A stretch of DNA of 64,000 nt from IMG/VR virus record IMGVR_UViG_3300026484_000007, positions 62,001 through 126,000 of that record; one strand, 5' to 3'. The notes beneath the pieces were generated by a model that saw only the letters and a list, made by a program, of their open reading frames with translations, was not told the origin of the DNA and did no database searches. How positions within the stretch are numbered: position 1 is the stretch's first letter; the number at the start of each line of letters is the position of its first letter. Shown here one piece after another: positions 15,567 through 24,809 of the stretch. The translations under genes were made by a program, and so were the position numbers.

Positions 15567-16062
15567 AAATTATAAATAATTTATCATGTAGTCTATGAAG
15601 TTTATTAAAGAACGATCTCGAAAGTTTTTGATATTCTTTATCATGAATGATATCTTCTGATACTAACGAGATGTCTATCATTTTATCTAACATTTCTACC
15701 AATTCCTGCAACTTTTCTTTTTCATCATAATCTCCTTCATGACGAGTACTAGTCCCCCAAATTTTTTCTATCAATGATAATTTATGTCTAATCACTAATA
15801 ATAAAAAAACAGGATCCGATTGACAATCAATTTTTAAAATAGGATCCCACTTTTTAATATTATTTTTATAAATCCATTTATCTCTTAAATAAGTATCCCA
15901 ATGATACTCAACCATCATTTTTAAAGTTAAATAATAATCTTTGATCGTTTTTAATAATACTTTAATCAAAGTCACTACTAAACTTTCATTTTTAAAAAAA
16001 TTCCAAAGATCTAAAATTGATCTTTTTATTTTAGATTTTAATCTAATAAAATATCTTACCAT
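15565..16062 (-). CDS. Hypothetical protein
   Basis: 165-aa ORF coupled to the exonuclease gene. Confidence 0.6.
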   Translation of the reverse strand: MVRYFIRLKSKIKRSILDLWNFFKNESLVVTLIKVLLKTIKDYYLTLKMMVEYHWDTYLRDKWIYKNNIKKWDPILKIDCQSDPVFLLLVIRHKLSLIEKIWGTSTRHEGDYDEKEKLQELVEMLDKMIDISLVSEDIIHDKEYQKLSRSFFNKLHRLHDKLFII

Positions 16063-17156
16063 GCATTTTCCTTTTCTTCATGAACGTAATATATTTCCTT
16101 ATTAAATTTATTGTTTCTTATTAATTGATTTTTATCTACTAAATAATGTTTAGTATTTCTATAATTAAAAATAAAACTTCTTCCAATAAATACTGCTTTA
16201 ACACTAGCATTATTATATTTAGCAATGGCATATAATTGTTCAACGAATTGTAATTTTTCATCTAATTTTACTGTTAAGATAACGTCAAGCATGTTGTAGG
16301 CTGCAAATCTTGCAGGGTTTTCTAAATAAACTTTATTGAAATCTCCTTCGAGATCTAATTTATTAATTTTTAACTCAACTTCAGCGATAGTATCTAATTT
16401 ATAATTAGGTAAAGATTTACCCATACCTGATCCTCCCGAATCAACGGGTTGGTATAATTTTAATATATCTACCGCAGTTCTATCGGCGATCTCGTATGTT
16501 ATTTGACCATATTTTTTAATACTAAAATTTGATATGATTTTAAAAGCATTTTCTTCGCCAATTAATTTAATTAATCTATTGATAGTATAAGGGTCGTCGA
16601 AGCGAGAGCTGTTGAATCCAATCAAAAACAGCGTTCCTATATCTTCGATGGTTTTAAAAAAATTAATAATCATAGTGGCTTCATCGTCAAATACGTTAAT
16701 AACTATTTCTAAATTTTTTATATCATACATTTTATTTTTTTCGCAAGATTCTTTATAAATTTTTTCTATCTCTTTTTTAAATTCTTCTGCATTATCAAGA
16801 AGCTGATGAAACTTAGAACTTTTATTTCTAAGAAAATCTATATAAATAGTATTATTAATATTATTATAATAAGCTATTGATGTTATTTCAAATTCTACTG
16901 AGATTGGATCAGGTGCTTTCTTTGGATCGAATCTTGTTTCGATATCGTAAAAAGTTTTATTCATAACTTTTCTATCCCAGAACTCTTGATCTTTATCTCC
17001 GTATTCATTTAAATATTTAAAGAAAAATAATTCTCCGGGAGAAACTTCAGTGTTATAAAATTGATAAAATTTTAAATTATCCGTTTTTAAGTTATCTATT
17101 ATATTTCTAAATGAGTCTCCATAAACTACATGCCCTGGAATTTCAATTGCTTTCAT
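16056..17156 (-). CDS. Family-B DNA polymerase, 3'-5' exonuclease module (split gene)
   Basis: ExoI YDIET, ExoII GFNSSRFDDPY, NYKLD, ExoIII YNMLDV. Confidence 0.88.
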   Translation of the reverse strand: MKAIEIPGHVVYGDSFRNIIDNLKTDNLKFYQFYNTEVSPGELFFFKYLNEYGDKDQEFWDRKVMNKTFYDIETRFDPKKAPDPISVEFEITSIAYYNNINNTIYIDFLRNKSSKFHQLLDNAEEFKKEIEKIYKESCEKNKMYDIKNLEIVINVFDDEATMIINFFKTIEDIGTLFLIGFNSSRFDDPYTINRLIKLIGEENAFKIISNFSIKKYGQITYEIADRTAVDILKLYQPVDSGGSGMGKSLPNYKLDTIAEVELKINKLDLEGDFNKVYLENPARFAAYNMLDVILTVKLDEKLQFVEQLYAIAKYNNASVKAVFIGRSFIFNYRNTKHYLVDKNQLIRNNKFNKEIYYVHEEKENAW

Positions 17157-17169
17157 TAATTCTCCTTTT

Positions 17170-18165
17170 TTAGATTCCTGATCTTATTTGGATCTCTTCA
17201 TCAAATAAATCTTTAAATTGATCTAATTTCATATCAATATTAAAATTCATAATTGTATCAAAATCTAATTCGATATCTAGTTCTTTAAAGATCTTTAAAA
17301 GATCATTCTTGTCTTTTTCATTTAAACCAACGGGTATGCTTATAACATTTAATTTTTTATTAATTTCATCTTTATTGATCATATATGGAGATAGTTCGTT
17401 GTTTTTATTTTTTAAATTATAAATATCTAAAATTTTTTTAAGATTATTTAATTTAACTTGAACGACGATGAAACTTTCTCCAGGTCTTAGATTATCTTTA
17501 AAAATTAAATTATAAAACATTGCTCCTTTAACTGGCATCGGTAAAGATTTAAATTCTTTCACTCCCCATTTTTTAGGAATTCCAAAGTATTCGATGTCAA
17601 GATTTTTAATAGCTAACTCTAGTTTTTTAGAATAGATCTTTTTTAGATCATTAAAAATTTTATAATATAATTCTTCTTCCGTTGTAATATCAAAGTTCTT
17701 CGTTAAATTAAAATACACTTCATTTAATAAATCAAATGTTATTTTCGTCACGTCCGATTTAACGATTTGACCTCCTGTTTTTTTAATCTTTCCTTGATCG
17801 TAATATGTTCCTTCATTCCATAATACTAAAAGCGAATAATATTTTTTACCACGGAAGAATCCACGCACTGCTACAACTTCGCTTTTAAAATCCATTAAAT
17901 TATACTTTGGATTTAAATTAAATTTATCTTGAAGATTTTCGTTTAAAAATTTTCCATAATACCCATTTGATGTTAAAGCGATATCTTGTGTATAATCCAC
18001 AGTCTTTTCAATATTTTCAAATTTTTCAAATGGTAATTTAATTTTCAGATACGCTGAGTCAGTATCTGAATATAAAGTCTCTTCTGCTCTGTCAACTGTT
18101 TCTATCCACAAAGGAGCGAAATCAAAGACTTCGCTGTGAAAATCATAATTGTTAATTTTTTCCAT
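17170..18165 (-). CDS. Family-B DNA polymerase, C-terminal palm/thumb fragment
   Basis: Motif C YSDTDS, KKYY, KKTGGQIVKSD; motifs A and B absent. Confidence 0.85.
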   Translation of the reverse strand: MEKINNYDFHSEVFDFAPLWIETVDRAEETLYSDTDSAYLKIKLPFEKFENIEKTVDYTQDIALTSNGYYGKFLNENLQDKFNLNPKYNLMDFKSEVVAVRGFFRGKKYYSLLVLWNEGTYYDQGKIKKTGGQIVKSDVTKITFDLLNEVYFNLTKNFDITTEEELYYKIFNDLKKIYSKKLELAIKNLDIEYFGIPKKWGVKEFKSLPMPVKGAMFYNLIFKDNLRPGESFIVVQVKLNNLKKILDIYNLKNKNNELSPYMINKDEINKKLNVISIPVGLNEKDKNDLLKIFKELDIELDFDTIMNFNIDMKLDQFKDLFDEEIQIRSGI

Positions 18166-18175
18166 TAATTTTCCT

Positions 18176-19066
18176 TTAAAAGAAAACGTTAGTTAAATAA
18201 TATTTATTTAACTCTTCTAAAAACTGATCTTTCCAAGATCCTTTATCATCTTTTTCTTTTAATTTATTTTTTACTTCATTGAATATTTTCTCTGCAACTA
18301 TTATATCTTTATGATCGCCCCATTTGAATACATATCCTTTTTTATTTCTTTCTCTGAAAATAAAAAAGGTATTATAAAATATAATTTTTTCATATAAAAG
18401 ATTAAACGGATCTTCAAAAGATCTATAAAAGATCTCTAAAAATTTTATTATAAAAAGATCAATCAATCCCATTGAAATCATTGGCAATAATTCATTTTCT
18501 ATAATTTCGAATAGTTCTTTTTCATTTATTTTATCTTTAAATTTTTTAGATTCTTTAGATAATTCTGTCGTTAATAACATAGAAAATAAAAAATCATCAG
18601 GATGTTTATAAGTTATAGCAATTCTAAAAATATTAATGAAATAAAAAACGATGGAAGAGAGATCTTTTTTAGATCTCTCTTCCAATAAAACAAACGGCGA
18701 ATTTAAATTTAAAAAACTTTTATTCGATGAAAGAATTTTTAAAATCTCTTGAGAGAATATTTTAGACCAATTTTGATCTTTTTTATTTAGCATCCATTTA
18801 GGATCTATAAGAGTATTTAATTCTATTTGCGACTCAATTAATTTTTCATAAAGAATTGGGTCAATACCCTTTTCTTTAATTAAACTTGAAATTTTATCAT
18901 CTTGCTCTTGAATAATTTTACTAATTGATTTTTTTGCTGGGCTTGCAATTCCATTAATATTATCTACACCAGATACATTAATTATATTTTTTACAACTGA
19001 GTTTACTTGATCTACTAAAGATTCATTCTGAGCAATTATATTCTTCTGTATATCGTTTGTCAACAT
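18176..19066 (-). CDS. Hypothetical protein
   Basis: 296-aa ORF in the replication block. Confidence 0.6.
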   Translation of the reverse strand: MLTNDIQKNIIAQNESLVDQVNSVVKNIINVSGVDNINGIASPAKKSISKIIQEQDDKISSLIKEKGIDPILYEKLIESQIELNTLIDPKWMLNKKDQNWSKIFSQEILKILSSNKSFLNLNSPFVLLEERSKKDLSSIVFYFINIFRIAITYKHPDDFLFSMLLTTELSKESKKFKDKINEKELFEIIENELLPMISMGLIDLFIIKFLEIFYRSFEDPFNLLYEKIIFYNTFFIFRERNKKGYVFKWGDHKDIIVAEKIFNEVKNKLKEKDDKGSWKDQFLEELNKYYLTNVFF

Positions 19067-20978
19067 ATTTAACTCCTTTACATAATGGACAGATTACTAT
19101 TCCTTGTTGTTCAAGGATTTCATGAAATTTAATATCTAATTCATTAACTTTATTTTTTAGATAAATTAAATTTTCATTATTTTTCTGAATCTGATCTTTT
19201 AAAGATCTTTTATCTCTTAAATAATTTTCTATAGTTGTTTTGTCTTCCATAATTAAATTAAATTTACTTTTTATATTTAAGATTTTTTCAATTTTATTTA
19301 CTGTATCTTCAAAGGATCTTTTTTGGATCATTAAGTGATCTTCAAAAGATCTTTTTTGTCTTAATAGATTTAAAAAATAATTTAATCTTTGGAACTCTTC
19401 AATGAAAATTATTTTTTTATTTAATTCATCTTTTCTTTTTAATTGATCTTCAAAAGATCTTTTTTGGATCCTTGCTTGATTTTTAAAATTTAAAAATGAT
19501 TTTAAATATTCTAACCATTGATATTCCGCTTTAATTTCCCCAACCCTTTCAATTTTTTTATTAATATTATTCAATTGATCTTCAAAAGATCTTTTTTCGA
19601 TCCTTAATGTTTCTAAAGTTTTTTTATCATTAAATAATTCATTAATATATTCTATAATAAATTTCAATTCTAATATTTTTAAATCTTTTTGATATTGAAG
19701 CAATTCTGTTTTAATTGTATTGATTTCTTTATCGTAAGATTTAATTTCTTGATTGAGTTCAATGATTTCATTTTTAAAATCTGAAATTGCAAGGCTAATG
19801 TTTTCAGTATTAAATAAAAAGTTAAATACTTTTTCAATATCTGAGCTTTTAGATCCAACCATAAATAATTGATCGTATTGAGAACTATAAGCGATTTTTT
19901 CTGTTTGATTTCTCAATTCGCCTTTGATATTTTTATATAATTTTTTTATATCAAGATGTTTAAAACCTAACTTAGATACTGCTTCTTTAATTACAGAATC
20001 TGCAAGATTTTTACCTAAGTATTGCTCTCCTTCGATTTCAAATATAACTTTTTTAGACTTATAAATCATTACTAAAGGATCTTCAAAAGATCCATCTTCG
20101 TTTTCTTTATAAAATTCAATCTTAGAAACTTTAGCTCCGAGTCTTAAAAATCTTTCTTTAAAATCATTAAATAATAAAGCTTTAATTGCTCTAAGACTTG
20201 CACTTTTACCACAATTGTTTGGCCCTGATATAACAACGAAACCTTTATAATAAAATTCAATATCTTTTATACTTTGAAAATTTTGAATTCTTACTTTGTA
20301 TCCATTTAAGATCTTATCATTTGGAAGATTAGTTTTTTTATCTTCAATGAAGACAGTTTTTAAATCATTTTCATAAAAATAATTTAATTGATAATGAATA
20401 TGAGAACCAACGTTTAAATCGTCTGTTTGAGATACTAATACTAATGTAAAATCGTATTCTTCAGCAAACTTTCTTAAGAATAAACTTAATCTTTCTCGGT
20501 ACTGTGGAGAAACTTGAGCAAAGCTTTCATCAAAAATATAAAATTTATTTTTGCTATAAAAGTATCCTATTAAGATCTTAAAAAGAACACTAATGACACT
20601 AAGTACTCCACCACCGTTAGTTTCAAGTAATTCATCGTTTTTGCCTATGTATTTATCGCCTTGATAAAATGTAATATTGTATTTTATATTCTTAGAAGTA
20701 CTTTTTACTTCTTGCTCAATATTGATTCTAATATCATCCTGAAAAATATCTTTTAACGCTGAATTTATAATATTTAATATAAATTCTTTTTTGTATTCTA
20801 ATTTATAATTTTTTAAATATTCTAAAATAGATACGCTAAGATTCCTTAACCTTATTTTTTCAGATAAAGAAAAAAGAAGAGATTCTCGCTGAGCGAGAAT
20901 CTCTTCTTTTTGAATGATTAGATTTTTTAATTGATTAATCTGAACTTGCAGTTCCTGACTCTTCTTCATTTGATACAT
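19023..20978 (-). CDS. SbcC/Rad50 (gp46-like) ATPase with permuted domain order
   Basis: Signature TNGGG, Walker B YIFDESF and LVSQ come before IQNFQS and Walker A SGPNNCGKS; C-terminal CPLC zinc hook. Confidence 0.82.
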   Translation of the reverse strand: MYQMKKSQELQVQINQLKNLIIQKEEILAQRESLLFSLSEKIRLRNLSVSILEYLKNYKLEYKKEFILNIINSALKDIFQDDIRINIEQEVKSTSKNIKYNITFYQGDKYIGKNDELLETNGGGVLSVISVLFKILIGYFYSKNKFYIFDESFAQVSPQYRERLSLFLRKFAEEYDFTLVLVSQTDDLNVGSHIHYQLNYFYENDLKTVFIEDKKTNLPNDKILNGYKVRIQNFQSIKDIEFYYKGFVVISGPNNCGKSASLRAIKALLFNDFKERFLRLGAKVSKIEFYKENEDGSFEDPLVMIYKSKKVIFEIEGEQYLGKNLADSVIKEAVSKLGFKHLDIKKLYKNIKGELRNQTEKIAYSSQYDQLFMVGSKSSDIEKVFNFLFNTENISLAISDFKNEIIELNQEIKSYDKEINTIKTELLQYQKDLKILELKFIIEYINELFNDKKTLETLRIEKRSFEDQLNNINKKIERVGEIKAEYQWLEYLKSFLNFKNQARIQKRSFEDQLKRKDELNKKIIFIEEFQRLNYFLNLLRQKRSFEDHLMIQKRSFEDTVNKIEKILNIKSKFNLIMEDKTTIENYLRDKRSLKDQIQKNNENLIYLKNKVNELDIKFHEILEQQGIVICPLCKGVKYVDKRYTEEYNCSE

Positions 20979-21417
20979 TTTGAAATTCCTCCTTTAATTT
21001 CTTAAATTTTTTTTCTTTTTCTTCATATAAATAATCGGCAAAAACACTTAAAAATAATAAAGCGTTTTCTCTCTCTTTAAAATAAAAGGAAATAATATTT
21101 AAATTTCCAGAATACTTTAAAGCGCTTAATGCTTTAATTGTTAAGAATCCAACTATATAACCAGAATCATCTATATCTAGTCGATAAATACTTGGATCTA
21201 AATTCATTTCAATGTATTCTTTTGATCCTTTGGAGATCACTAACTCAATTACCTCTAAATCTAATGGATCAATTAATTTATTACCGAGAACGAAAAGTTT
21301 TTCATTTTCGGTATTTTTATAAATAATGTAATCTTCAATTTTAGATATAGGGATTAAAACCCCTTGTTCTTTTAACGTCTCAATTTTTTCAACTGTTTCT
21401 TTATCACGAATTATCAT
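20935..21417 (-). CDS. Hypothetical protein
   Basis: 160-aa ORF with AAGGAG RBS. Confidence 0.6.
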   Translation of the reverse strand: MIIRDKETVEKIETLKEQGVLIPISKIEDYIIYKNTENEKLFVLGNKLIDPLDLEVIELVISKGSKEYIEMNLDPSIYRLDIDDSGYIVGFLTIKALSALKYSGNLNIISFYFKERENALLFLSVFADYLYEEKEKKFKKLKEEFQNVSNEEESGTASSD

Positions 21418-21418
21418 A

Positions 21419-22807
21419 TCACTCCTTTCTTTCTAAATTTTCTAAAGCTTTTTTTCTGAGAATACAACTACCACATTCACCACATGGTTCTCCATTTTTA
21501 GGATAATAACATGAGAATGATAAATTAAGAATTTCATAAAATTTATTTTTACCAAATTCTTTTACGAATTCTTTGATCATATTTGTCTTCGTTCTATTGA
21601 TATATGGAGCTTTCATCCCAAACCCCGTGAAGAATTTTCCACCATGATTTAATACATTTTCCATATTATCCATCCAAGCAGAATTATTATCACCGAAAAC
21701 TTGTCCTTCTGATAAATTTAATCCGAAGACAATTAATCCTAAACTTACTCCATCTTTTTCTGCGATAGATTTAATTATTTCTGCAAAAATAGAATTTCTA
21801 AAAGGAATATAACTTAAATTTTCTTCAGTTTCTCTTTCATCACCTTTTGATGATTTATCCGTAAGTTTTAAGTTAGTATCTAAAATAGATGCTAATCCAT
21901 TAATTATATTTTTTACATCAATAATTCTGAAAGAATATTGATAATCTGGAAAGTCTTTTTTTACTAATTCAATAAACTTTTCAGTAGCAGCAATTTCTTC
22001 TTGAGTACTATTATTACCATAATCAAAATAAATAAAATTAATTTTGATTGCATCTTCATTGAAAATCAACGAAATGTGTTTTTCGATTTCATCAATTACT
22101 TTATAAGCACTTAATGAAATATCCATTCCACCACTAAAACTTATATAAATATTTTTATATACGTCTGATGGCCTATCGCAATGAGCTTCTGTTTTTATAA
22201 ATACACCATCCTTAAAATTAAATTGTGGATCCATGCTATAAATTTTTAAATTTTCGTGTTCATGTTTCCAAAGACCCATTCCTTTATTGACGATATTGTA
22301 TTCGTCGAAATCTGGGAAAATCTCAAGATATGTATATAATCCTTTAATGAAATTTTCTGGTAAATCAGAATGAAACATTATTGCTTCAGTATCAACTGTT
22401 AATTCTTTATTTAATTTTTTTTCAACTTCTTTATCATTCGAAATTGTTCCATGAACCCAATACCAATCATGTTCATTGATAAATGGAGGCATTGTTTCTA
22501 ATCCAGATTTTTCCATTTCAGGTTTCTGTCTAGAAAATAATACTAAGTGACATTTTTGAAATAAAAAAAGCGATTGTTTTTTTAATTCTTCAAAAATTTT
22601 ATCAAAAAAATCATTGTACGTATCTTCAAAAGATTCGCCTTTGCTGATTATAGATTTATAACTACTATACGGATTTCCTAACCACAATAATGTGAAAGAA
22701 TAACCATCTCCACCTTTTTTATTCAATTCATATTCTAATAATTTTTTATTAGATAATAAATCCATTATATTCTTAATTTGATCATTGCTGTAAAGTATTT
22801 GACACAT
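21419..22807 (-). CDS. queC: Gat-QueC: Ntn glutamine amidotransferase domain fused to 7-cyano-7-deazaguanine synthase
   Basis: N-terminal M-C, HGTISN and VDTE in the GATase-II part; SFSGGMD PP-loop, YIPFRN, SCY..PCGECGSC..R. Confidence 0.88.
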   Translation of the reverse strand: MCQILYSNDQIKNIMDLLSNKKLLEYELNKKGGDGYSFTLLWLGNPYSSYKSIISKGESFEDTYNDFFDKIFEELKKQSLFLFQKCHLVLFSRQKPEMEKSGLETMPPFINEHDWYWVHGTISNDKEVEKKLNKELTVDTEAIMFHSDLPENFIKGLYTYLEIFPDFDEYNIVNKGMGLWKHEHENLKIYSMDPQFNFKDGVFIKTEAHCDRPSDVYKNIYISFSGGMDISLSAYKVIDEIEKHISLIFNEDAIKINFIYFDYGNNSTQEEIAATEKFIELVKKDFPDYQYSFRIIDVKNIINGLASILDTNLKLTDKSSKGDERETEENLSYIPFRNSIFAEIIKSIAEKDGVSLGLIVFGLNLSEGQVFGDNNSAWMDNMENVLNHGGKFFTGFGMKAPYINRTKTNMIKEFVKEFGKNKFYEILNLSFSCYYPKNGEPCGECGSCILRKKALENLERKE

Positions 22808-22880: not shown

Positions 22881-24809
22881 TTAGATCTCTTTTTGCTCTT
22901 CTTCAATTTCTTCATTTTCTTCATCAGATAAAATGAATAAACCTCTTGCATGAATACTTAATGAATCATATGCTCCAGTTTTAAAAACTGAATTTTTAAA
23001 ATTTACTGCATAAATTTTTTCACCAGTATTTATTTCTTTTACTTCTTTTACATGAATTCCTCTATGTTTTCTTGCAGTCGCAAGAATTCCATGAGTTTCA
23101 AGATATTTTTTATCTTCTTCCAAAAGCTTTTCTAATCTTTCAGATTGTAATCTTAATTTTAAAGTATTAGGTTCTCTTTTAGATACAACATGATAGTATC
23201 TGAAATCTTCATCAATAACCATAGCTCTTAGACCAGTATCTTTTCCTCCAAAATCAGCATCTCCATTTAAATTAAAAACTCTAGAATTTTCATCCCCGTA
23301 ATTATATGGAAGCCAATCTACGTTTCTATGTCCATGAATTTGAAATTGATTTTCTTTAGTATGTTTTTCCCAAGTTTTTTTGATAACTTGCTCATCTCCA
23401 TATTTACCAATTCCTCTGATAATTTCTTCAGTTTTTAAAAAGATTTTTGGCGGCTGAATAATTCCTCCATGAGTAAATAAAATTTCTTTTCCTTTGAAAT
23501 CTATCCAAGCCATTTGAGCTAATTTAGAATAAAAATCTTTAATTGCTTTTAATTCTTTATCTTTATAATTTTCATAGATAAAATAAAAGGTTTTTCTTGT
23601 TTGTATTGAAATTAACCTTCTTAATTCTTTATCATAGTATTCTTCGATCTTTAAAAGATTAAATTTTATTCTTTCTAGTTTTTTAAGATTTTCATTGTAA
23701 GATCTAACATCTCTATAAATTTGAATAATTGAATCAAATATATCTGGATCAGATTCTTTGATTACATCTAAATTAAAATATTTTTGAAGTTTGTCTTTAG
23801 ACCAATCTTTTTTTAAATTAAAAAGAACGTTTTTAATTACTGACAGATCTTTTGGATCTGCAAAAGAACTTAAATGTTTTTCTTCGAAAAGTTCTTTATT
23901 TACCTCGAATCTTTTTTCGATCTCTTTTAACTTTTCATTAATTGATTTGATTATAGATTTATAATCATCAATTTTAGATTTAGCATCAATGTACTCATTG
24001 AAATATGTAAATCCTAATTCATGATTTCCTTGTAATAGCATTACATTTTCGTATTGAAAAATTTCCATAAAGAAATCAATTGTCTTCTTAAGATTTTCTT
24101 CGTCTGGAGCTCTATCAAAATAGTCTCCTAAAAATATCCAAAAATAATTAGGATCTTTTATAGATTCAATATTTTCTTCTTTTTTAATTTTATTAATTAA
24201 CTCTTCTAATTCATCGTAACAACCATGAACATCTCCGATAGCAATTACTTTTTGATATTGATTAAAATCAAATGATTTTTCTTTAGATTCTTTCCATTTA
24301 GAAAATTCATCCGGTTTAATTACTTCAACCCAACTTGGAATGTTTTGAGTTCTTTGTCTTTCAAAAATATTTTTAATTGCTTCTTCTGGAACATATTTAT
24401 GTGGTTCAAAAGATTCTAATCTTGATTTATTTCTTTTTAAAATTTCTTCTAAAGAAAGATCTCTGAAGTCAACTAAAGTTACTCTGTATCTGTATTTTTT
24501 AGCTAACTGTCTATATCTATTAATTAATTTAGAAGAACTATGAGTAGCATCGATTACCGTAAAATCTCCTCTCTTCATTCTTTCTTCTAAAAACGCAAAA
24601 ACAAGTTCCCAAACCCTTTTATCGTTTTTTGAGGAAATTGTTTTTATTAGAGAGTCTGGTTGAGAAACCGGACTCTCCATTTTAAGTCTAATATCATCTG
24701 GTTCAATAGCAAATGGTCTAAGACCATTTTTATTAATCCAAGTACTTTTGCCTGATCCAGGCGCCCCACATGTTAAAATTAAATTTCTCATTTTTCTCCT
24801 TTTTTCCAA
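22881..24809 (-). CDS. Polynucleotide kinase (AAA_33)-metallophosphoesterase with truncated RNA-ligase-like start
   Basis: GAPGSGKST, VIDATH; GDVHG, GDYFDR, GNHE, THGG, HGH; C-terminal NF..VF..ARGLF. Probable start 24791. Confidence 0.85.
   Translation of the reverse strand: MEKRRKMRNLILTCGAPGSGKSTWINKNGLRPFAIEPDDIRLKMESPVSQPDSLIKTISSKNDKRVWELVFAFLEERMKRGDFTVIDATHSSSKLINRYRQLAKKYRYRVTLVDFRDLSLEEILKRNKSRLESFEPHKYVPEEAIKNIFERQRTQNIPSWVEVIKPDEFSKWKESKEKSFDFNQYQKVIAIGDVHGCYDELEELINKIKKEENIESIKDPNYFWIFLGDYFDRAPDEENLKKTIDFFMEIFQYENVMLLQGNHELGFTYFNEYIDAKSKIDDYKSIIKSINEKLKEIEKRFEVNKELFEEKHLSSFADPKDLSVIKNVLFNLKKDWSKDKLQKYFNLDVIKESDPDIFDSIIQIYRDVRSYNENLKKLERIKFNLLKIEEYYDKELRRLISIQTRKTFYFIYENYKDKELKAIKDFYSKLAQMAWIDFKGKEILFTHGGIIQPPKIFLKTEEIIRGIGKYGDEQVIKKTWEKHTKENQFQIHGHRNVDWLPYNYGDENSRVFNLNGDADFGGKDTGLRAMVIDEDFRYYHVVSKREPNTLKLRLQSERLEKLLEEDKKYLETHGILATARKHRGIHVKEVKEINTGEKIYAVNFKNSVFKTGAYDSLSIHARGLFILSDEENEEIEEEQKEI

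What the first reader, a model, noticed from the sequence alone, without database searches (positions are those of the whole stretch)
19023..20978. Circularly permuted SbcC/Rad50
Established order: Walker A half, coil, CxxC hook, coil, signature/Walker B half. Seen here: short coil, signature TNGGG, Walker B FDE, then NFQS and Walker A GPNNCGKS, long coil, terminal CPLC. The chain is opened just after the zinc hook and the two ATPase halves are fused directly. Most of the return coil is missing. Inference: a separate coiled-coil protein may supply it. No SbcD/Mre11 gene was recognised in the window.
Basis: partly seen in the sequence, partly recalled or inferred. Interest (0 to 1): 0.6.

Follow-up and report, generated by a model that had tools for sequence, protein, structure and literature searches.

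The report
Circularly permuted phage Rad50/SbcC ATPase
A giant phage from a hydrothermal-vent metagenome encodes its Rad50/SbcC DNA-end-processing ATPase with the two halves in swapped order in one chain; this is a real, conserved gene that seems to have arisen by fusing the two genes of a widespread, undescribed split version of the enzyme.

Summary
Window 19023-20978 (minus strand) is a 651-aa ORF. Its order is short helix, C-terminal ATPase half (NGGG signature, Walker B), 12-aa linker, N-terminal half (NFQS, Walker A), 233-aa helix, terminal CxxCxG. Profile and fold comparisons place Pyrococcus Rad50 residues 738-882 on residues 57-215 and Rad50/SMC N-halves on 224-391.

It is not an assembly artefact. 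More than 60 full-length homologues (34-60% identity) share the order, and contigs from other sequencing studies cross the junction without indels.

The C-half profile also finds hundreds of stand-alone ~200-aa proteins. In their phages a separate 400-490-aa gene encodes the N-half, the coil and a terminal CxxC. The fused proteins form one clade among them, so fission followed by re-fusion in reverse order is the likely origin.

An Mre11/SbcD-fold nuclease lies 62 kb away, outside the window. Its orthologues sit within 0.3-5 kb of the ATPase gene in four relatives.

It is unresolved whether the distal coil folds back on itself (my slight preference) or pairs between protomers. No conserved neighbouring gene supplies a return coil.

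This is a new variant of a known kind, of moderate to high interest.

The parts
19023..20978 (-). Whole gene: 651-aa circularly permuted SbcC/Rad50-type ABC ATPase (P0001)
   Evidence: ORF and translation. More than 60 full-length homologues share the order. It is the only AAA_23 hit over the cut-off in the 272.6-kb genome.
20811..20960 (-). N-terminal helix, res 7-56: the last stretch of the 'return' coil, leading into the C-half
20334..20810 (-). C-terminal ATPase half (lobe II), res 57-215, placed first in the chain
20607..20621 (-). Variant signature motif T-N-G-G-G (res 120-124)
   Evidence: N121, G122, G123 and G124 are invariant in 65 of 65 sequences. The canonical motif is S-G-G-E/Q; T4 gp46 has SEGE at 471.
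20526..20543 (-). Walker B, FYIFDE (res 146-151)
   Evidence: D150 and E151 are invariant. The stretch aligns to the Pfu Rad50 Walker B.
20424..20435 (-). H-loop position, VSQT (res 182-185): Gln where the catalytic His normally sits
   Evidence: The column holds Q in 53 and H in 12 of 65 sequences. His is invariant in 30 stand-alone C-halves. The position aligns to the 'LVSH' of Pfu Rad50.
20298..20333 (-). Fusion linker, res 216-227, joining the C-half directly to the N-half
   Evidence: Sequence and length vary across the family, with inserts of up to about 20 aa. Contigs of independent runs cross it with no gaps.
19806..20297 (-). N-terminal ATPase half (lobe I), res 228-391
20202..20225 (-). 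Walker A / P-loop, GPNNCGKS (res 252-259)
   Evidence: G252, G257, K258 and S259 are invariant.
19872..19907 (-). Q-loop candidates (invariant Q358, Q367, D369)
   Evidence: All three are invariant. Which Gln is the Q-loop residue was not resolved.
19107..19805 (-). Long C-terminal helix/coil, res 392-624. Its first ~55 residues pair with the N-terminal helix; the partner of the distal ~180 residues is unresolved
   Evidence: AF2 predicts helices 392-512 and 530-624. pLDDT falls to 44-50 at 507-590 and rises to about 70 at 600-640. Family coil length is 198-288 aa, median 214.
19392..19442 (-). Predicted helix break, res 513-529: candidate apex if the coil folds back
   Evidence: The break is in the AF2 secondary structure. 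The largest family insertions fall before res 509 (40 columns) and 532 (55 columns). The weakest heptad window lies at a median 0.58 of coil length, against 0.62 expected for an apex.
19068..19091 (-). Terminal C-x-x-C-x-G knuckle (C630, C633, G635): candidate half of a shared zinc site
   Evidence: C630, C633 and G635 are invariant; position 637 is G in 64 of 65 sequences and K here. AF2 places a beta hairpin at 627-640. The same terminal CxxC is present in all six stand-alone N-half proteins examined.
19193..19591 (.). Cluster of the 15-nt palindrome GATCTT-YWR-AAGATC inside the coil-coding part; in frame it encodes the repeated peptide (K)RSFED
   Evidence: This is specific to this phage's copy and is not a family feature.

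Best explanation
The gene encodes the phage's only SbcC/Rad50-type ABC ATPase, as a natural circular permutant. The C-terminal nucleotide-binding half (res 57-215: signature, Walker B, H-loop position) comes first. A short variable linker follows, then the N-terminal half (res 228-391: Walker A, Q-loop). The two halves fold into an ordinary Rad50/SMC-type head.

The N-terminal helix (res 7-56) packs antiparallel against the first ~55 residues of the long C-terminal helix (from res 392). This rebuilds the base of the coiled-coil arm, the place where Mre11 docks on Rad50 in solved complexes. The arm ends in an invariant CxxCxG knuckle. By analogy with the Rad50 hook, I infer that it supplies two of the four ligands of a zinc ion shared by two chains.

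I infer that the protein works with the genome's Mre11/SbcD-fold nuclease (338 aa, G000:C1:144863-145879, outside the window) as the phage's DNA-end-processing and recombination complex, like T4 gp46/gp47.

The permuted chain most likely arose from a widespread two-gene form: a 'short coil + C-half' gene of about 200 aa and an 'N-half + long coil + terminal CxxC' gene of 400-490 aa. The C-half gene came to lie directly upstream of the N-half gene and the two fused.

Shown: motif order, fold of both halves, the base coiled coil, conservation of the fused order, existence of the split form, fold of the nuclease and its gene linkage in relatives. Inferred: zinc binding, dimerisation, the ATPase-nuclease complex, the direction of evolution, and the path of the distal ~180 coil residues. 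For that last point I slightly prefer a fold-back hairpin with its apex near res 510-535.
For: Motif order is read directly from the sequence.

The family profile against PDB sequences aligns positions 230-283 to Pfu Rad50 6-60 and positions 150-212 to Pfu Rad50 296-357.

The word search found 66 relatives at E <= 0.001, 64 of them 567-686 aa at E <= 3e-77 and 34-60% identity. They come from many contigs, several of 224-286 kb. Contigs of independent runs cross the junction without gaps.

The exhaustive search with the C-half profile gave 2292 hits. Of the best 150, about 51 are fused forms or their fragments with the match at the N-terminus, and about 96 are stand-alone proteins of 190-250 aa. 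None is a canonical long protein with the match at its C-terminal end.

The split partner genes were found in the same genomes. In Tunturi_5 they are gp14 and gp181. In five ~110-kb phage contigs there are N-half genes of 401-436 aa ending in CxxC. The N-half profile matches them end to end at E 1e-33 to 1e-14.

In the tree the fused forms are one clade: 51 fused plus one 'alone' row from an 871-nt contig, with two changes needed.

This is the only AAA_23 gene in the genome.

The nuclease keeps all phosphoesterase motifs. Its AF2 model (pLDDT 85) has Mre11/SbcD chains as all its top PDB matches, the best being MjMre11 at E 1.7e-12, TM 0.60/0.66. Its orthologues lie 0.3 kb upstream (L004), 0.3 kb downstream (L018), 2.8 kb (L017) and 5 kb (L013) from the permuted ATPase gene.

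Complex prediction gave weak support: score 0.44 against 0.00 for the best of 3 controls. That mark was reached by 58 of 80 solved complexes and 2 of 110 mismatched pairs. At 0.60 or under, only 7 of those 80 reached it, as did both mismatches that passed. The runs agree in at least 68% of contacts and the partner's pLDDT is at least 77. My own alignments were used, and Mre11-Rad50 complexes are solved, so the pass may partly reflect memory.
Against: Pfam SbcC_Walker_B finds nothing in the genome. No curated Rad50/SbcC model reaches its cut-off on this protein.

The signature motif is NGGG rather than SGGE/Q. The H-loop His is Gln in this protein and in 53 of 65 relatives, so ATP turnover may be slow or altered.

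SMC heads match the model about as well as Rad50 does, so the fold alone does not single out Rad50.

In this genome the nuclease is 62 kb away, and the complex test gives only weak support.

The distal coil is modelled at pLDDT 44-50. Zinc binding and dimerisation are untested.

The tree is unrooted, so 'fusion of split genes' rather than 'fission of a permuted gene' is an inference.
Confidence: 0.8

Rival explanations
1. Artefact: a misassembly or a sequencing frameshift fused two adjacent genes (a C-half gene and an N-half gene).
For: Split relatives with separate C-half and N-half genes do exist. The Logan unitigs of the source run break at window 20796-20825, inside the gene.
Against: That unitig break lies at res 51-61, not at the junction, and is an ordinary 30-nt overlap at a low-complexity repeat. 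The junction (window 20297-20366) is crossed without gaps by contigs of four runs from three studies. 64 full-length homologues and about 50 cluster representatives at 50% identity carry the same continuous frame. In the split genomes examined, the two genes lie 2-108 kb apart and, where the order was worked out, the N-half gene comes first, so simple read-through could not give this order.
Confidence: 0.02
2. Terminal-hook reading. The CxxC is the true apex hook and the return strand has been lost except for its last 50 residues. The ~180 unpartnered residues of two protomers then pair with each other as a parallel two-stranded coiled coil, stapled at the tip by one zinc ion.
For: The terminal CxxC is invariant in fused and split forms. 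Two Cys per chain call for a second chain to complete a zinc site. No hits of the PDB-wide fold search align a regular hairpin to model 446-624. The simplest fission point of a canonical gene is right after the hook.
Against: The arm would be about 34 nm, nearly twice that of T4 gp46, whose CxxC sits at residue 288 of 560. The predicted helix break at 513-529, the indel hot spots flanking it, the heptad minimum at 0.58 of coil length and the symmetric pLDDT profile all fit an apex there. Total coil content (283 aa; family median about 264) is close to my estimate of about 240 aa for the two arms of T4 gp46 together.
Confidence: 0.35
3. A separate coiled-coil protein, encoded elsewhere, supplies the missing return strand.
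For: The asymmetry of 50 against 233 coil residues is real. Both flanking ORFs overlap the gene by 44 nt, which suggests co-translation.
Against: The flanking ORFs (160 aa and 296 aa) have no Pfam or PHROG match. They are not conserved next to the gene in five related loci at BLAST E < 1e-4. The upstream 160-aa ORF resembles the 105-aa ORF of L004 only at E 0.18, and neither looks like a coiled coil.
Confidence: 0.1
4. It is not a Rad50/SbcC equivalent but another SMC-like ABC ATPase, for example a defence or counter-defence ATPase, or a RecF/RecN-like protein, that happens to be permuted.
For: SMC and RecF heads and the retron-associated ATPases (9e8z_C, 9kjz_C) also match. There is a weak NCBIfam hit to the defence ATPase MAD3, 21.8 bits against a cut-off of 420. 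There is no SbcC_Walker_B hit.
Against: The gene is repeatedly linked to an Mre11/SbcD-fold nuclease in relatives, with the T4-like order nuclease, small ORF, ATPase in L004. It is the only candidate for an SbcC in a jumbo phage, and SbcCD is reported as practically universal in jumbo phages (PMC7824862). A stand-alone C-half gives its best NCBIfam hit to Rad50 PRK01156 positions 786-891. The gene sits among replication and repair genes.
Confidence: 0.1

Closest known systems
T4 gp46/gp47 (phage Rad50/Mre11; SbcC-like and SbcD-like subunits)
   Same: It is a phage-encoded ABC ATPase with Walker A, Q-loop, signature-like motif, Walker B, a coiled-coil arm and a CxxC motif. Total coil content is similar: about 283 aa here against about 240 aa in gp46, estimated from motif positions. 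It is paired with a nuclease of about 340 aa of Mre11/SbcD fold. In the relative L004 the gene order is nuclease, small ORF, ATPase, as in T4 genes 47, 46.2, 46.1, 46.
   Different: The order of the halves is reversed in the chain. The CxxC is 19 residues from the C-terminus rather than mid-chain (residue 288 of 560 in gp46). The signature is NGGG rather than SEGE. The H-loop His is Gln. In this genome the nuclease gene is 62 kb away. No sequence-level hit to T4 was found in the phage collection.
Archaeal and bacterial Rad50/SbcC (e.g. Pyrococcus furiosus Rad50, E. coli SbcC)
   Different: The chain is permuted. The two strands leaving the head are unequal (50 against 233 aa). No Pfam SbcC_Walker_B or curated Rad50 model is passed.
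Two-gene split SbcC-like ATPase of phages (phrog_15167 'ATPase' plus phrog_16465/phrog_4747 'exonuclease'; Tunturiibacter phage Tunturi_5 gp14 plus gp181)
   Same: The domain designs are the same: short coil plus C-half with a G-G-G signature and D-E-S Walker B, and N-half starting at NFQS plus a long coil and a terminal CxxC. Profile matches are E 1.9e-11 for the C-half and E 1e-33 to 1e-14 for the N-half.
   Different: There the two parts are separate genes 2-108 kb apart, N-half gene first where the order was worked out. Here they form one chain in the opposite order. The stand-alone C-halves keep the H-loop His. I found no paper that describes the split pair as one enzyme.
Mre11-Rad50 fusion proteins (Mimivirus R555 and relatives, PMC3175470)
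   Same: This is another case of rearranged gene architecture in viral MR complexes.
   Different: That case fuses the nuclease to the ATPase. It is not a permutation within the ATPase.

Membership tests
Rad50/SbcC (SMC-like ABC ATPase of the MR/SbcCD complex) | Walker A P-loop (GxxxxGK[ST]) in the N-lobe | tested here: met
   GPNNCGKS at 252-259; G252, G257, K258 and S259 are invariant in 65 sequences.
Rad50/SbcC (SMC-like ABC ATPase of the MR/SbcCD complex) | Walker B (hhhhDE) in the C-lobe | tested here: met
   FYIFDE at 146-151, with D150 and E151 invariant. It aligns to the Pfu Rad50 Walker B.
Rad50/SbcC (SMC-like ABC ATPase of the MR/SbcCD complex) | ABC signature motif S-G-G-(E/Q) | tested here: inconclusive
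   An invariant N-G-G-G occupies the place, and the Ser is not conserved at the equivalent position. T4 gp46 has SEGE.
Rad50/SbcC (SMC-like ABC ATPase of the MR/SbcCD complex) | H-loop histidine | tested here: not met
   Q184 in this protein. The column holds Q in 53 and H in 12 of 65 relatives. His is invariant in 30 stand-alone C-halves.
Rad50/SbcC (SMC-like ABC ATPase of the MR/SbcCD complex) | Chain order: N-half, coil, hook, coil, C-half | tested here: not met
   The order is C-half (57-215), linker, N-half (228-391), coil, CxxC.
Rad50/SbcC (SMC-like ABC ATPase of the MR/SbcCD complex) | Three-dimensional fold of the bipartite ABC head | tested here: met
Rad50/SbcC (SMC-like ABC ATPase of the MR/SbcCD complex) | Antiparallel intramolecular coiled coil leaving the head | tested here: met
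Rad50/SbcC (SMC-like ABC ATPase of the MR/SbcCD complex) | CxxC zinc hook at the apex of the coil, shared between two chains | tested here: inconclusive
   An invariant CxxCxG exists but lies at the C-terminus. Its position in space, zinc binding and dimerisation could not be tested.
Rad50/SbcC (SMC-like ABC ATPase of the MR/SbcCD complex) | Partner Mre11/SbcD nuclease encoded in the genome and genetically linked | tested here: met
   A 338-aa phosphoesterase with all motifs and the Mre11/SbcD fold is present. Its orthologues lie 0.3-5 kb from the ATPase gene in L004, L018, L017 and L013. In this genome it is 62 kb away.
Rad50/SbcC (SMC-like ABC ATPase of the MR/SbcCD complex) | Physical complex with the nuclease | tested here: inconclusive
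   Complex prediction gave weak support: 0.44 against 0.00 for the best of 3 controls. The mark was reached by 58 of 80 solved complexes and 2 of 110 mismatches, but at 0.60 or under by only 7 of the 80 and by both mismatches that passed. Runs agree in at least 68% of contacts and the partner's pLDDT is at least 77.
Rad50/SbcC (SMC-like ABC ATPase of the MR/SbcCD complex) | Curated sequence models (Pfam SbcC_Walker_B PF13558; NCBIfam Rad50/SbcC) | tested here: not met
   PF13558 gives no hit in the genome at E <= 10. NCBIfam has no Rad50/SbcC hit for P0001. Only the generic AAA_23 passes, at 45.8 bits against a cut-off of 27.
Split two-gene phage SbcC-like ATPase (phrog_15167 plus phrog_16465/4747) | Short N-terminal coil plus C-half with G-G-G signature and D-E-S Walker B | tested here: met
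   phrog_15167 matches res 7-189 at E 1.9e-11. The C-half profile retrieves hundreds of stand-alone proteins of 190-250 aa.
Split two-gene phage SbcC-like ATPase (phrog_15167 plus phrog_16465/4747) | N-half beginning at NFQS/NFQR, with a long coil and a terminal CxxC | tested here: met
   phrog_4747 and phrog_16465 match res 228-528. The N-half profile matches six stand-alone proteins end to end, and all six end in CxxC.
Split two-gene phage SbcC-like ATPase (phrog_15167 plus phrog_16465/4747) | The two parts encoded by separate genes | tested here: not met
   Here there is one continuous ORF, and the same holds in about 50 cluster representatives.

The most novel reading that the evidence does not exclude
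The whole assemblage (split and fused forms, more than 2000 profile hits) would be a distinct architectural class of Rad50-like machines. In it the arm is not a continuous antiparallel hairpin closed by an apical hook. Either it is a single helix that forms a parallel coiled coil between two protomers, stapled by a terminal zinc knuckle. Or it is a nicked hairpin whose zinc knuckle clamps the two arms together only about 7 nm above the heads. Either case would show that chain continuity through the hook and return strand is dispensable for MR function, and would give natural 'cut' variants for testing how signals travel along SMC-type arms.
Probability: 0.35. Interest if true: 0.8.

Novelty: new variant of a known kind. 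Interest (0 to 1): 0.62.

Why it matters
Rad50/SbcC and the SMC proteins are defined by one topology: two half-heads joined by a long out-and-back coiled coil with a dimerising tip. How the arm and hook talk to the ATPase head is still debated.

This family offers natural variants in which the chain is cut in the arm. It is either left as two polypeptides or re-joined head to head, and the CxxC ends up at a free terminus. They are abundant in large phages, so they evidently work.

They provide ready-made constructs for asking whether covalent continuity of the arm matters, where zinc-mediated bridging must sit, and how tolerant the head is to permutation.

For annotation, the two halves of the split form are currently labelled 'ATPase' and 'exonuclease' (Tunturi_5) or even 'EcfA2' (JGI names). 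SbcC is therefore being missed in many phage genomes.

The case also looks like a clean example of circular permutation by gene fission followed by fusion.

Tried and rejected
(1) Misassembly or frameshift: rejected.

(2) Tunturi_5 gp23, 'exonuclease recombination-associated protein', as the missing N-half: its sequence has no P-loop. The real N-half is gp181.

(3) The 337-aa Metallophos gene downstream in L013 as the partner nuclease: it is not related to this genome's candidate (BLASTP E 1.3). The true orthologue in L013 is at 1844-2881.

(4) The 642-aa kinase-phosphatase at window 22881-24809 as Mre11: it is a Pnkp-type RNA-repair protein (phrog_8238 at E 2e-111).

(5) Flanking ORFs as suppliers of a return coil: no family hits and no conservation.

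(6) The word search with the C-half alone found only fragments of fused proteins. The split relatives appeared only in the exhaustive profile search.

(7) The genome-contig scan gave one hit, L034 in a Bacillota MAG. It proved to be two adjacent ECF-type ABC ATPase genes, with the end of one and the start of the next mimicking the permuted order. This is a false lead. It probably also explains JGI's 'EcfA2' names.

(8) The phage collection holds only Tunturi_5 as a relative of the stand-alone C-half.

(9) The search for related loci with 30 stand-alone C-halves failed for lack of a conserved stretch. Six closer sequences worked.

(10) The PDB-wide fold search did not resolve the distal coil; all top hits cover only model 1-56 plus 392-~500.

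(11) In the ESM Atlas structure search, two bacterial 'AAA family ATPase' clusters (611 and 833 aa) align over query residues 16-433 and 36-605 at TM 0.47-0.50. I could not fetch members, so whether bacterial permuted forms exist remains open.

(12) P0117, the one 'stand-alone' row inside the fused clade, sits on an 871-nt contig that ends 25 nt after the gene. I do not count it as evidence of secondary fission.

(13) Four literature searches found no description of a permuted or split Rad50/SbcC. The library lacks most subscription journals.
Full report
**Context.** The window is positions 62001-126000 of a 272.6-kb IMG/VR virus record that CheckV rates 97% complete. GC content is about 25%. 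Near-identical DNA occurs in hydrothermal-vent metagenomes. The target lies in a block of minus-strand replication and repair genes. These include pieces of a family-B DNA polymerase, a QueC fusion protein and a Pnkp-like kinase-phosphatase.

**Observation.** Window 19023-20978 (minus strand) is one open frame of 651 aa, P0001. Reading from the N-terminus it holds:
- a helix (res 7-56);
- T-N-G-G-G (120-124);
- FYIFDE (146-151);
- VSQT at the H-loop position (182-185);
- a short linker (216-227);
- NFQS (233-236);
- GPNNCGKS (252-259);
- invariant Q358, Q367 and D369;
- a helix of about 233 residues (392-624);
- C-P-L-C-K-G (630-635), 19 residues before the stop.

**It is a real gene, not an artefact.**
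- The word search returned 66 relatives. 64 of them are 567-686 aa long at E <= 3e-77 and 34-60% identity. They come from many independent assemblies, several of them contigs of 224-286 kb.
- In a 65-sequence alignment the catalytic motifs and the terminal C-x-x-C-x-G are invariant. The linker and the middle of the coil vary.
- Logan contigs of four runs from three studies were laid on window 18800-21200. The junction (res 205-228, window 20297-20366) is covered without any indel. The covering pieces are the likely source run (record 1, 0 differences) and records 12, 21 and 31 of three other runs.
- The only contig break inside the gene is an ordinary unitig overlap at 20796-20825, far from the junction.

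**It is a circular permutant of a Rad50/SMC-type head.**
- Pfam sees only AAA_23, at 228-434.
- PHROGs splits the protein in two. phrog_15167 ('ATPase', a 211-position profile) covers res 7-189. phrog_4747 and phrog_16465 ('exonuclease') cover 228-528.
- The family profile against PDB sequences aligns positions 230-283 with P. furiosus Rad50 6-60, and positions 150-212 with Rad50 296-357.
- The AF2 model has mean pLDDT 79, mostly above 85 (block means 64-97) across residues 11-330. Its Foldseek hits are SMC and Rad50 head chains.
- The N-terminal helix therefore plays the part of the last stretch of the return strand, and the base of the arm is rebuilt.

**The wider family is split.**
- tblastn against deposited phages found a 221-aa 'ATPase', gp14 of Tunturiibacter phage Tunturi_5, matching res 67-209. 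It consists of a short coil, T-F-G-G-G, a C-D-E-S Walker B and T-H-Q.
- The same genome encodes gp181 108 kb away, annotated 'exonuclease', 485 aa. It begins at NFQS, has a P-loop and a long coil, and ends in C-G-K-C-G.
- I then searched 1.84 billion cluster representatives with a profile of the C-half. The word search with that half alone had found only fragments, and the origin and novelty claims depend on which relatives exist.
- That search gave 2292 hits at E <= 0.001. Of the best 150, about 51 are fused proteins or their fragments with the match at the N-terminus. About 96 are stand-alone proteins of 190-250 aa. None is a canonical long protein with the match at its C-terminal end.
- Five IMG/VR contigs (four of ~110 kb, one of 56 kb) carrying stand-alone C-halves each also carry a separate 401-436-aa gene. 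That gene has an NFQS/NFQR start, a P-loop, a coil and a terminal C-P-x-C-G. The two genes are separated by 2 to 30 kb; where they lie within 10 kb the N-half gene comes first.
- A profile of res 225-651 matches these proteins end to end at E 1e-33 to 1e-14.
- The unequal-strand design with a terminal CxxC is therefore older than the fusion.

**Origin.**
- In a maximum-likelihood tree of 147 C-halves, all 51 fused rows fall in one clade. One 'stand-alone' row, P0117, falls with them. Support is SH-aLRT 91 and the label needs two changes.
- P0117 comes from an 871-nt contig that ends 25 nt after the gene, so I discount it.
- The tree is unrooted. Even so, the much greater diversity of split forms and their shared architecture make fission of a canonical gene followed by re-fusion in reverse order the most economical story.
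- Direct read-through of neighbouring genes cannot explain the fusion, because in the split genomes examined the genes are not adjacent and, where order was worked out, the N-half comes first.

**Partner nuclease.**
The only Metallophos domain in it belongs to the Pnkp-like protein.
- The genome has a second Metallophos gene, at G000:C1:144863-145879, encoding 338 aa.
- Its 36-sequence alignment keeps D8, H10, G51-D52, G87-N-H-D90, H172 and G205-H-x-H208. Its AF2 model has pLDDT 85. All its top PDB matches are Mre11/SbcD chains: MjMre11 at E 1.7e-12 with TM 0.60/0.66, and E. coli SbcD at E about 1e-10.
- In the related 281-kb phage the orthologue (38% identity) lies directly upstream, in the order nuclease (345 aa), 105-aa ORF, permuted ATPase. 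This mirrors T4 genes 47, 46.2, 46.1, 46.
- Orthologues also lie 0.3 kb downstream in L018, 2.8 kb upstream in L017 and 5 kb upstream in L013.
- Complex prediction of res 1-470 with the nuclease gave weak support: score 0.44 against 0.00 for the best of 3 controls. That mark was reached by 58 of 80 solved complexes and 2 of 110 mismatched pairs. At 0.60 or under, only 7 of those 80 reached it, as did both mismatches that passed. The runs agree in at least 68% of contacts and the partner's pLDDT is at least 77. My own alignments were used, and similar complexes are solved, so the pass may reflect memory.
- P0001 is the only AAA_23 protein in the genome. SbcC/SbcD are reported as practically universal in jumbo phages (PMC7824862).
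- I therefore take the pair to be this phage's MR complex.

**Where the arm goes.** This is the weak point. The N-terminal strand has about 50 residues and the C-terminal strand 233 (family median 214, range 198-288).

The spare ~180 residues must then pair between protomers or with another protein.

*Reading B.* The long helix folds back near res 510-535 and residues 530-624 are the return strand. The chain break then lies about 50 residues above the head, with the zinc knuckle at that nick.

Evidence for B:
- AF2 breaks the helix at 513-529. pLDDT falls towards that point from both sides, from 85 down to 44 and back up to about 70.
- The two largest insertion sites in the family flank it, before res 509 and before res 532. 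The weakest heptad window sits at a median 0.58 of coil length (IQR 0.51-0.63), against 0.62 expected for an apex.
- Total coil (283 aa; family median about 264) is close to the two arms of T4 gp46 together. I estimate those at about 240 aa by placing the gp46 coil boundaries by analogy with this protein's motif spacing; the CxxC is at residue 288 of 560.

Evidence against B:
- No PDB hairpin aligns to model 446-624.
- The two distal arms would be unequal, 71 against 95 residues.
- It needs a new zinc site at the nick and loss of the apical one.

I put B at about 0.5, an inter-protomer coil at about 0.35 and a third protein at about 0.1. Only two Cys are conserved, with no other invariant Cys or His in the family. 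A zinc site would therefore need two chains under either reading. This is an inference by analogy with the Rad50 hook.

**Deviations that may matter for function.** The signature is N-G-G-G in all 65 sequences. The H-loop His is Gln in this protein and in 53 of 65 relatives, while 30 stand-alone C-halves keep His. In other ABC ATPases the H-loop His supports hydrolysis (general knowledge of the family). This enzyme may therefore turn over ATP slowly or use another residue.

**Comparison with what is known.** The protein works like, and is evolutionarily a form of, Rad50/SbcC. It fails two defining features, the chain order and the H-loop His. It also passes no curated Rad50/SbcC model. I file it as a new variant of a known kind, not as an ordinary member. 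Four full-text searches found no description of a permuted or split Rad50/SbcC. The library lacks most subscription journals, so this is not proof of absence. PHROGs already holds the two halves as separate families with generic names.

**Limits.**
- No structure coordinates could be inspected.
- The distal coil is poorly modelled.
- The tree is a quick search without an outgroup.
- Contig-level read evidence cannot exclude rare variants.
- Zinc binding, dimerisation, ATPase activity and the complex are all untested.

Noticed in passing
window 19193-19207, 19337-19351, 19445-19459, 19577-19591, 20078-20092, 18409-18423, and 11 other sites in the window: The 15-nt palindrome GATCTT-YWR-AAGATC carries two GATC sites 11 nt apart. 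It occurs 17 times in the window at up to 1 mismatch, against 0.05 expected. It occurs at 49 exact sites in the 272.6-kb genome, against 0 for the reversed control. The densest cluster lies inside the coil-coding part of the permuted ATPase gene. There it is read in frame as the repeated peptide (K)RSFED at res 462, 506, 542, 553 and 590, with repeat units of 108-144 nt. Its function is unknown; it could be a protein-binding or methylation-related site.
   Followed up: partly
window 16056-17156 (-), 17170-18165 (-); G000:C1:4808-6088 (+), outside the window: The family-B DNA polymerase is encoded in at least three separate ORFs. The ORF for the C-terminal part (YSDTDS motif; phrog_262 positions 572-852) lies upstream of the exonuclease-domain ORF (phrog_262 positions 83-373). 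The palm motif A/B part lies about 73 kb away. This is a second replication or repair enzyme in this genome whose parts are split and out of order.
   Followed up: partly
P0112 (754-aa family member found): One fused family member ends in a hydrophobic, transmembrane-like tail instead of the CxxC knuckle. A few others lack the motif but look truncated or frameshifted.
   Followed up: no
window 20935-20978 and 19023-19066: The ATPase gene overlaps both neighbours by 44 nt: the upstream 160-aa ORF and the downstream 296-aa ORF. Neither has a Pfam or PHROG match. The downstream ORF also contains one copy of the palindrome and the peptide RSFED.
   Followed up: partly
window 22881-24809 (-) and 21419-22807 (-): A 642-aa Pnkp-like protein combines a polynucleotide kinase (AAA_33) with a calcineurin-like phosphatase and matches the first 466 of 737 positions of the phrog_8238 'RNA ligase' family at E 2e-111. 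Next to it is a 462-aa protein with a C-terminal QueC domain and an unassigned N-terminal ~245 residues, which suggests 7-deazaguanine chemistry.
   Followed up: no
L002:4800-5465 and L011:1450-2907 (Tunturiibacter phage Tunturi_5, PP885688.1): gp14 ('ATPase') and gp181 ('exonuclease'), 108 kb apart, are the two halves of one split SbcC-like ATPase. The record does not say so. Several metagenomic family members are named 'EcfA2' by JGI, probably because tandem ECF ATPase genes mimic the Walker B to Walker A order.
   Followed up: yes
ESM Atlas clusters reported: Two bacterial (mostly Pseudomonadota) 'AAA family ATPase' clusters of 611 and 833 aa align structurally over query residues 16-433 and 36-605 at TM 0.47-0.50. 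Both ranges span both halves. Whether bacterial proteins with the permuted order exist could not be checked.
   Followed up: no
L006:48-1088 (-), G000:C1 about 143803-144843: Directly downstream of the Mre11/SbcD-like gene lies a 346-aa ORF with a weak match to thymidylate synthase families (phrog_85 at E 9e-14) over its C-terminal third only.
   Followed up: no
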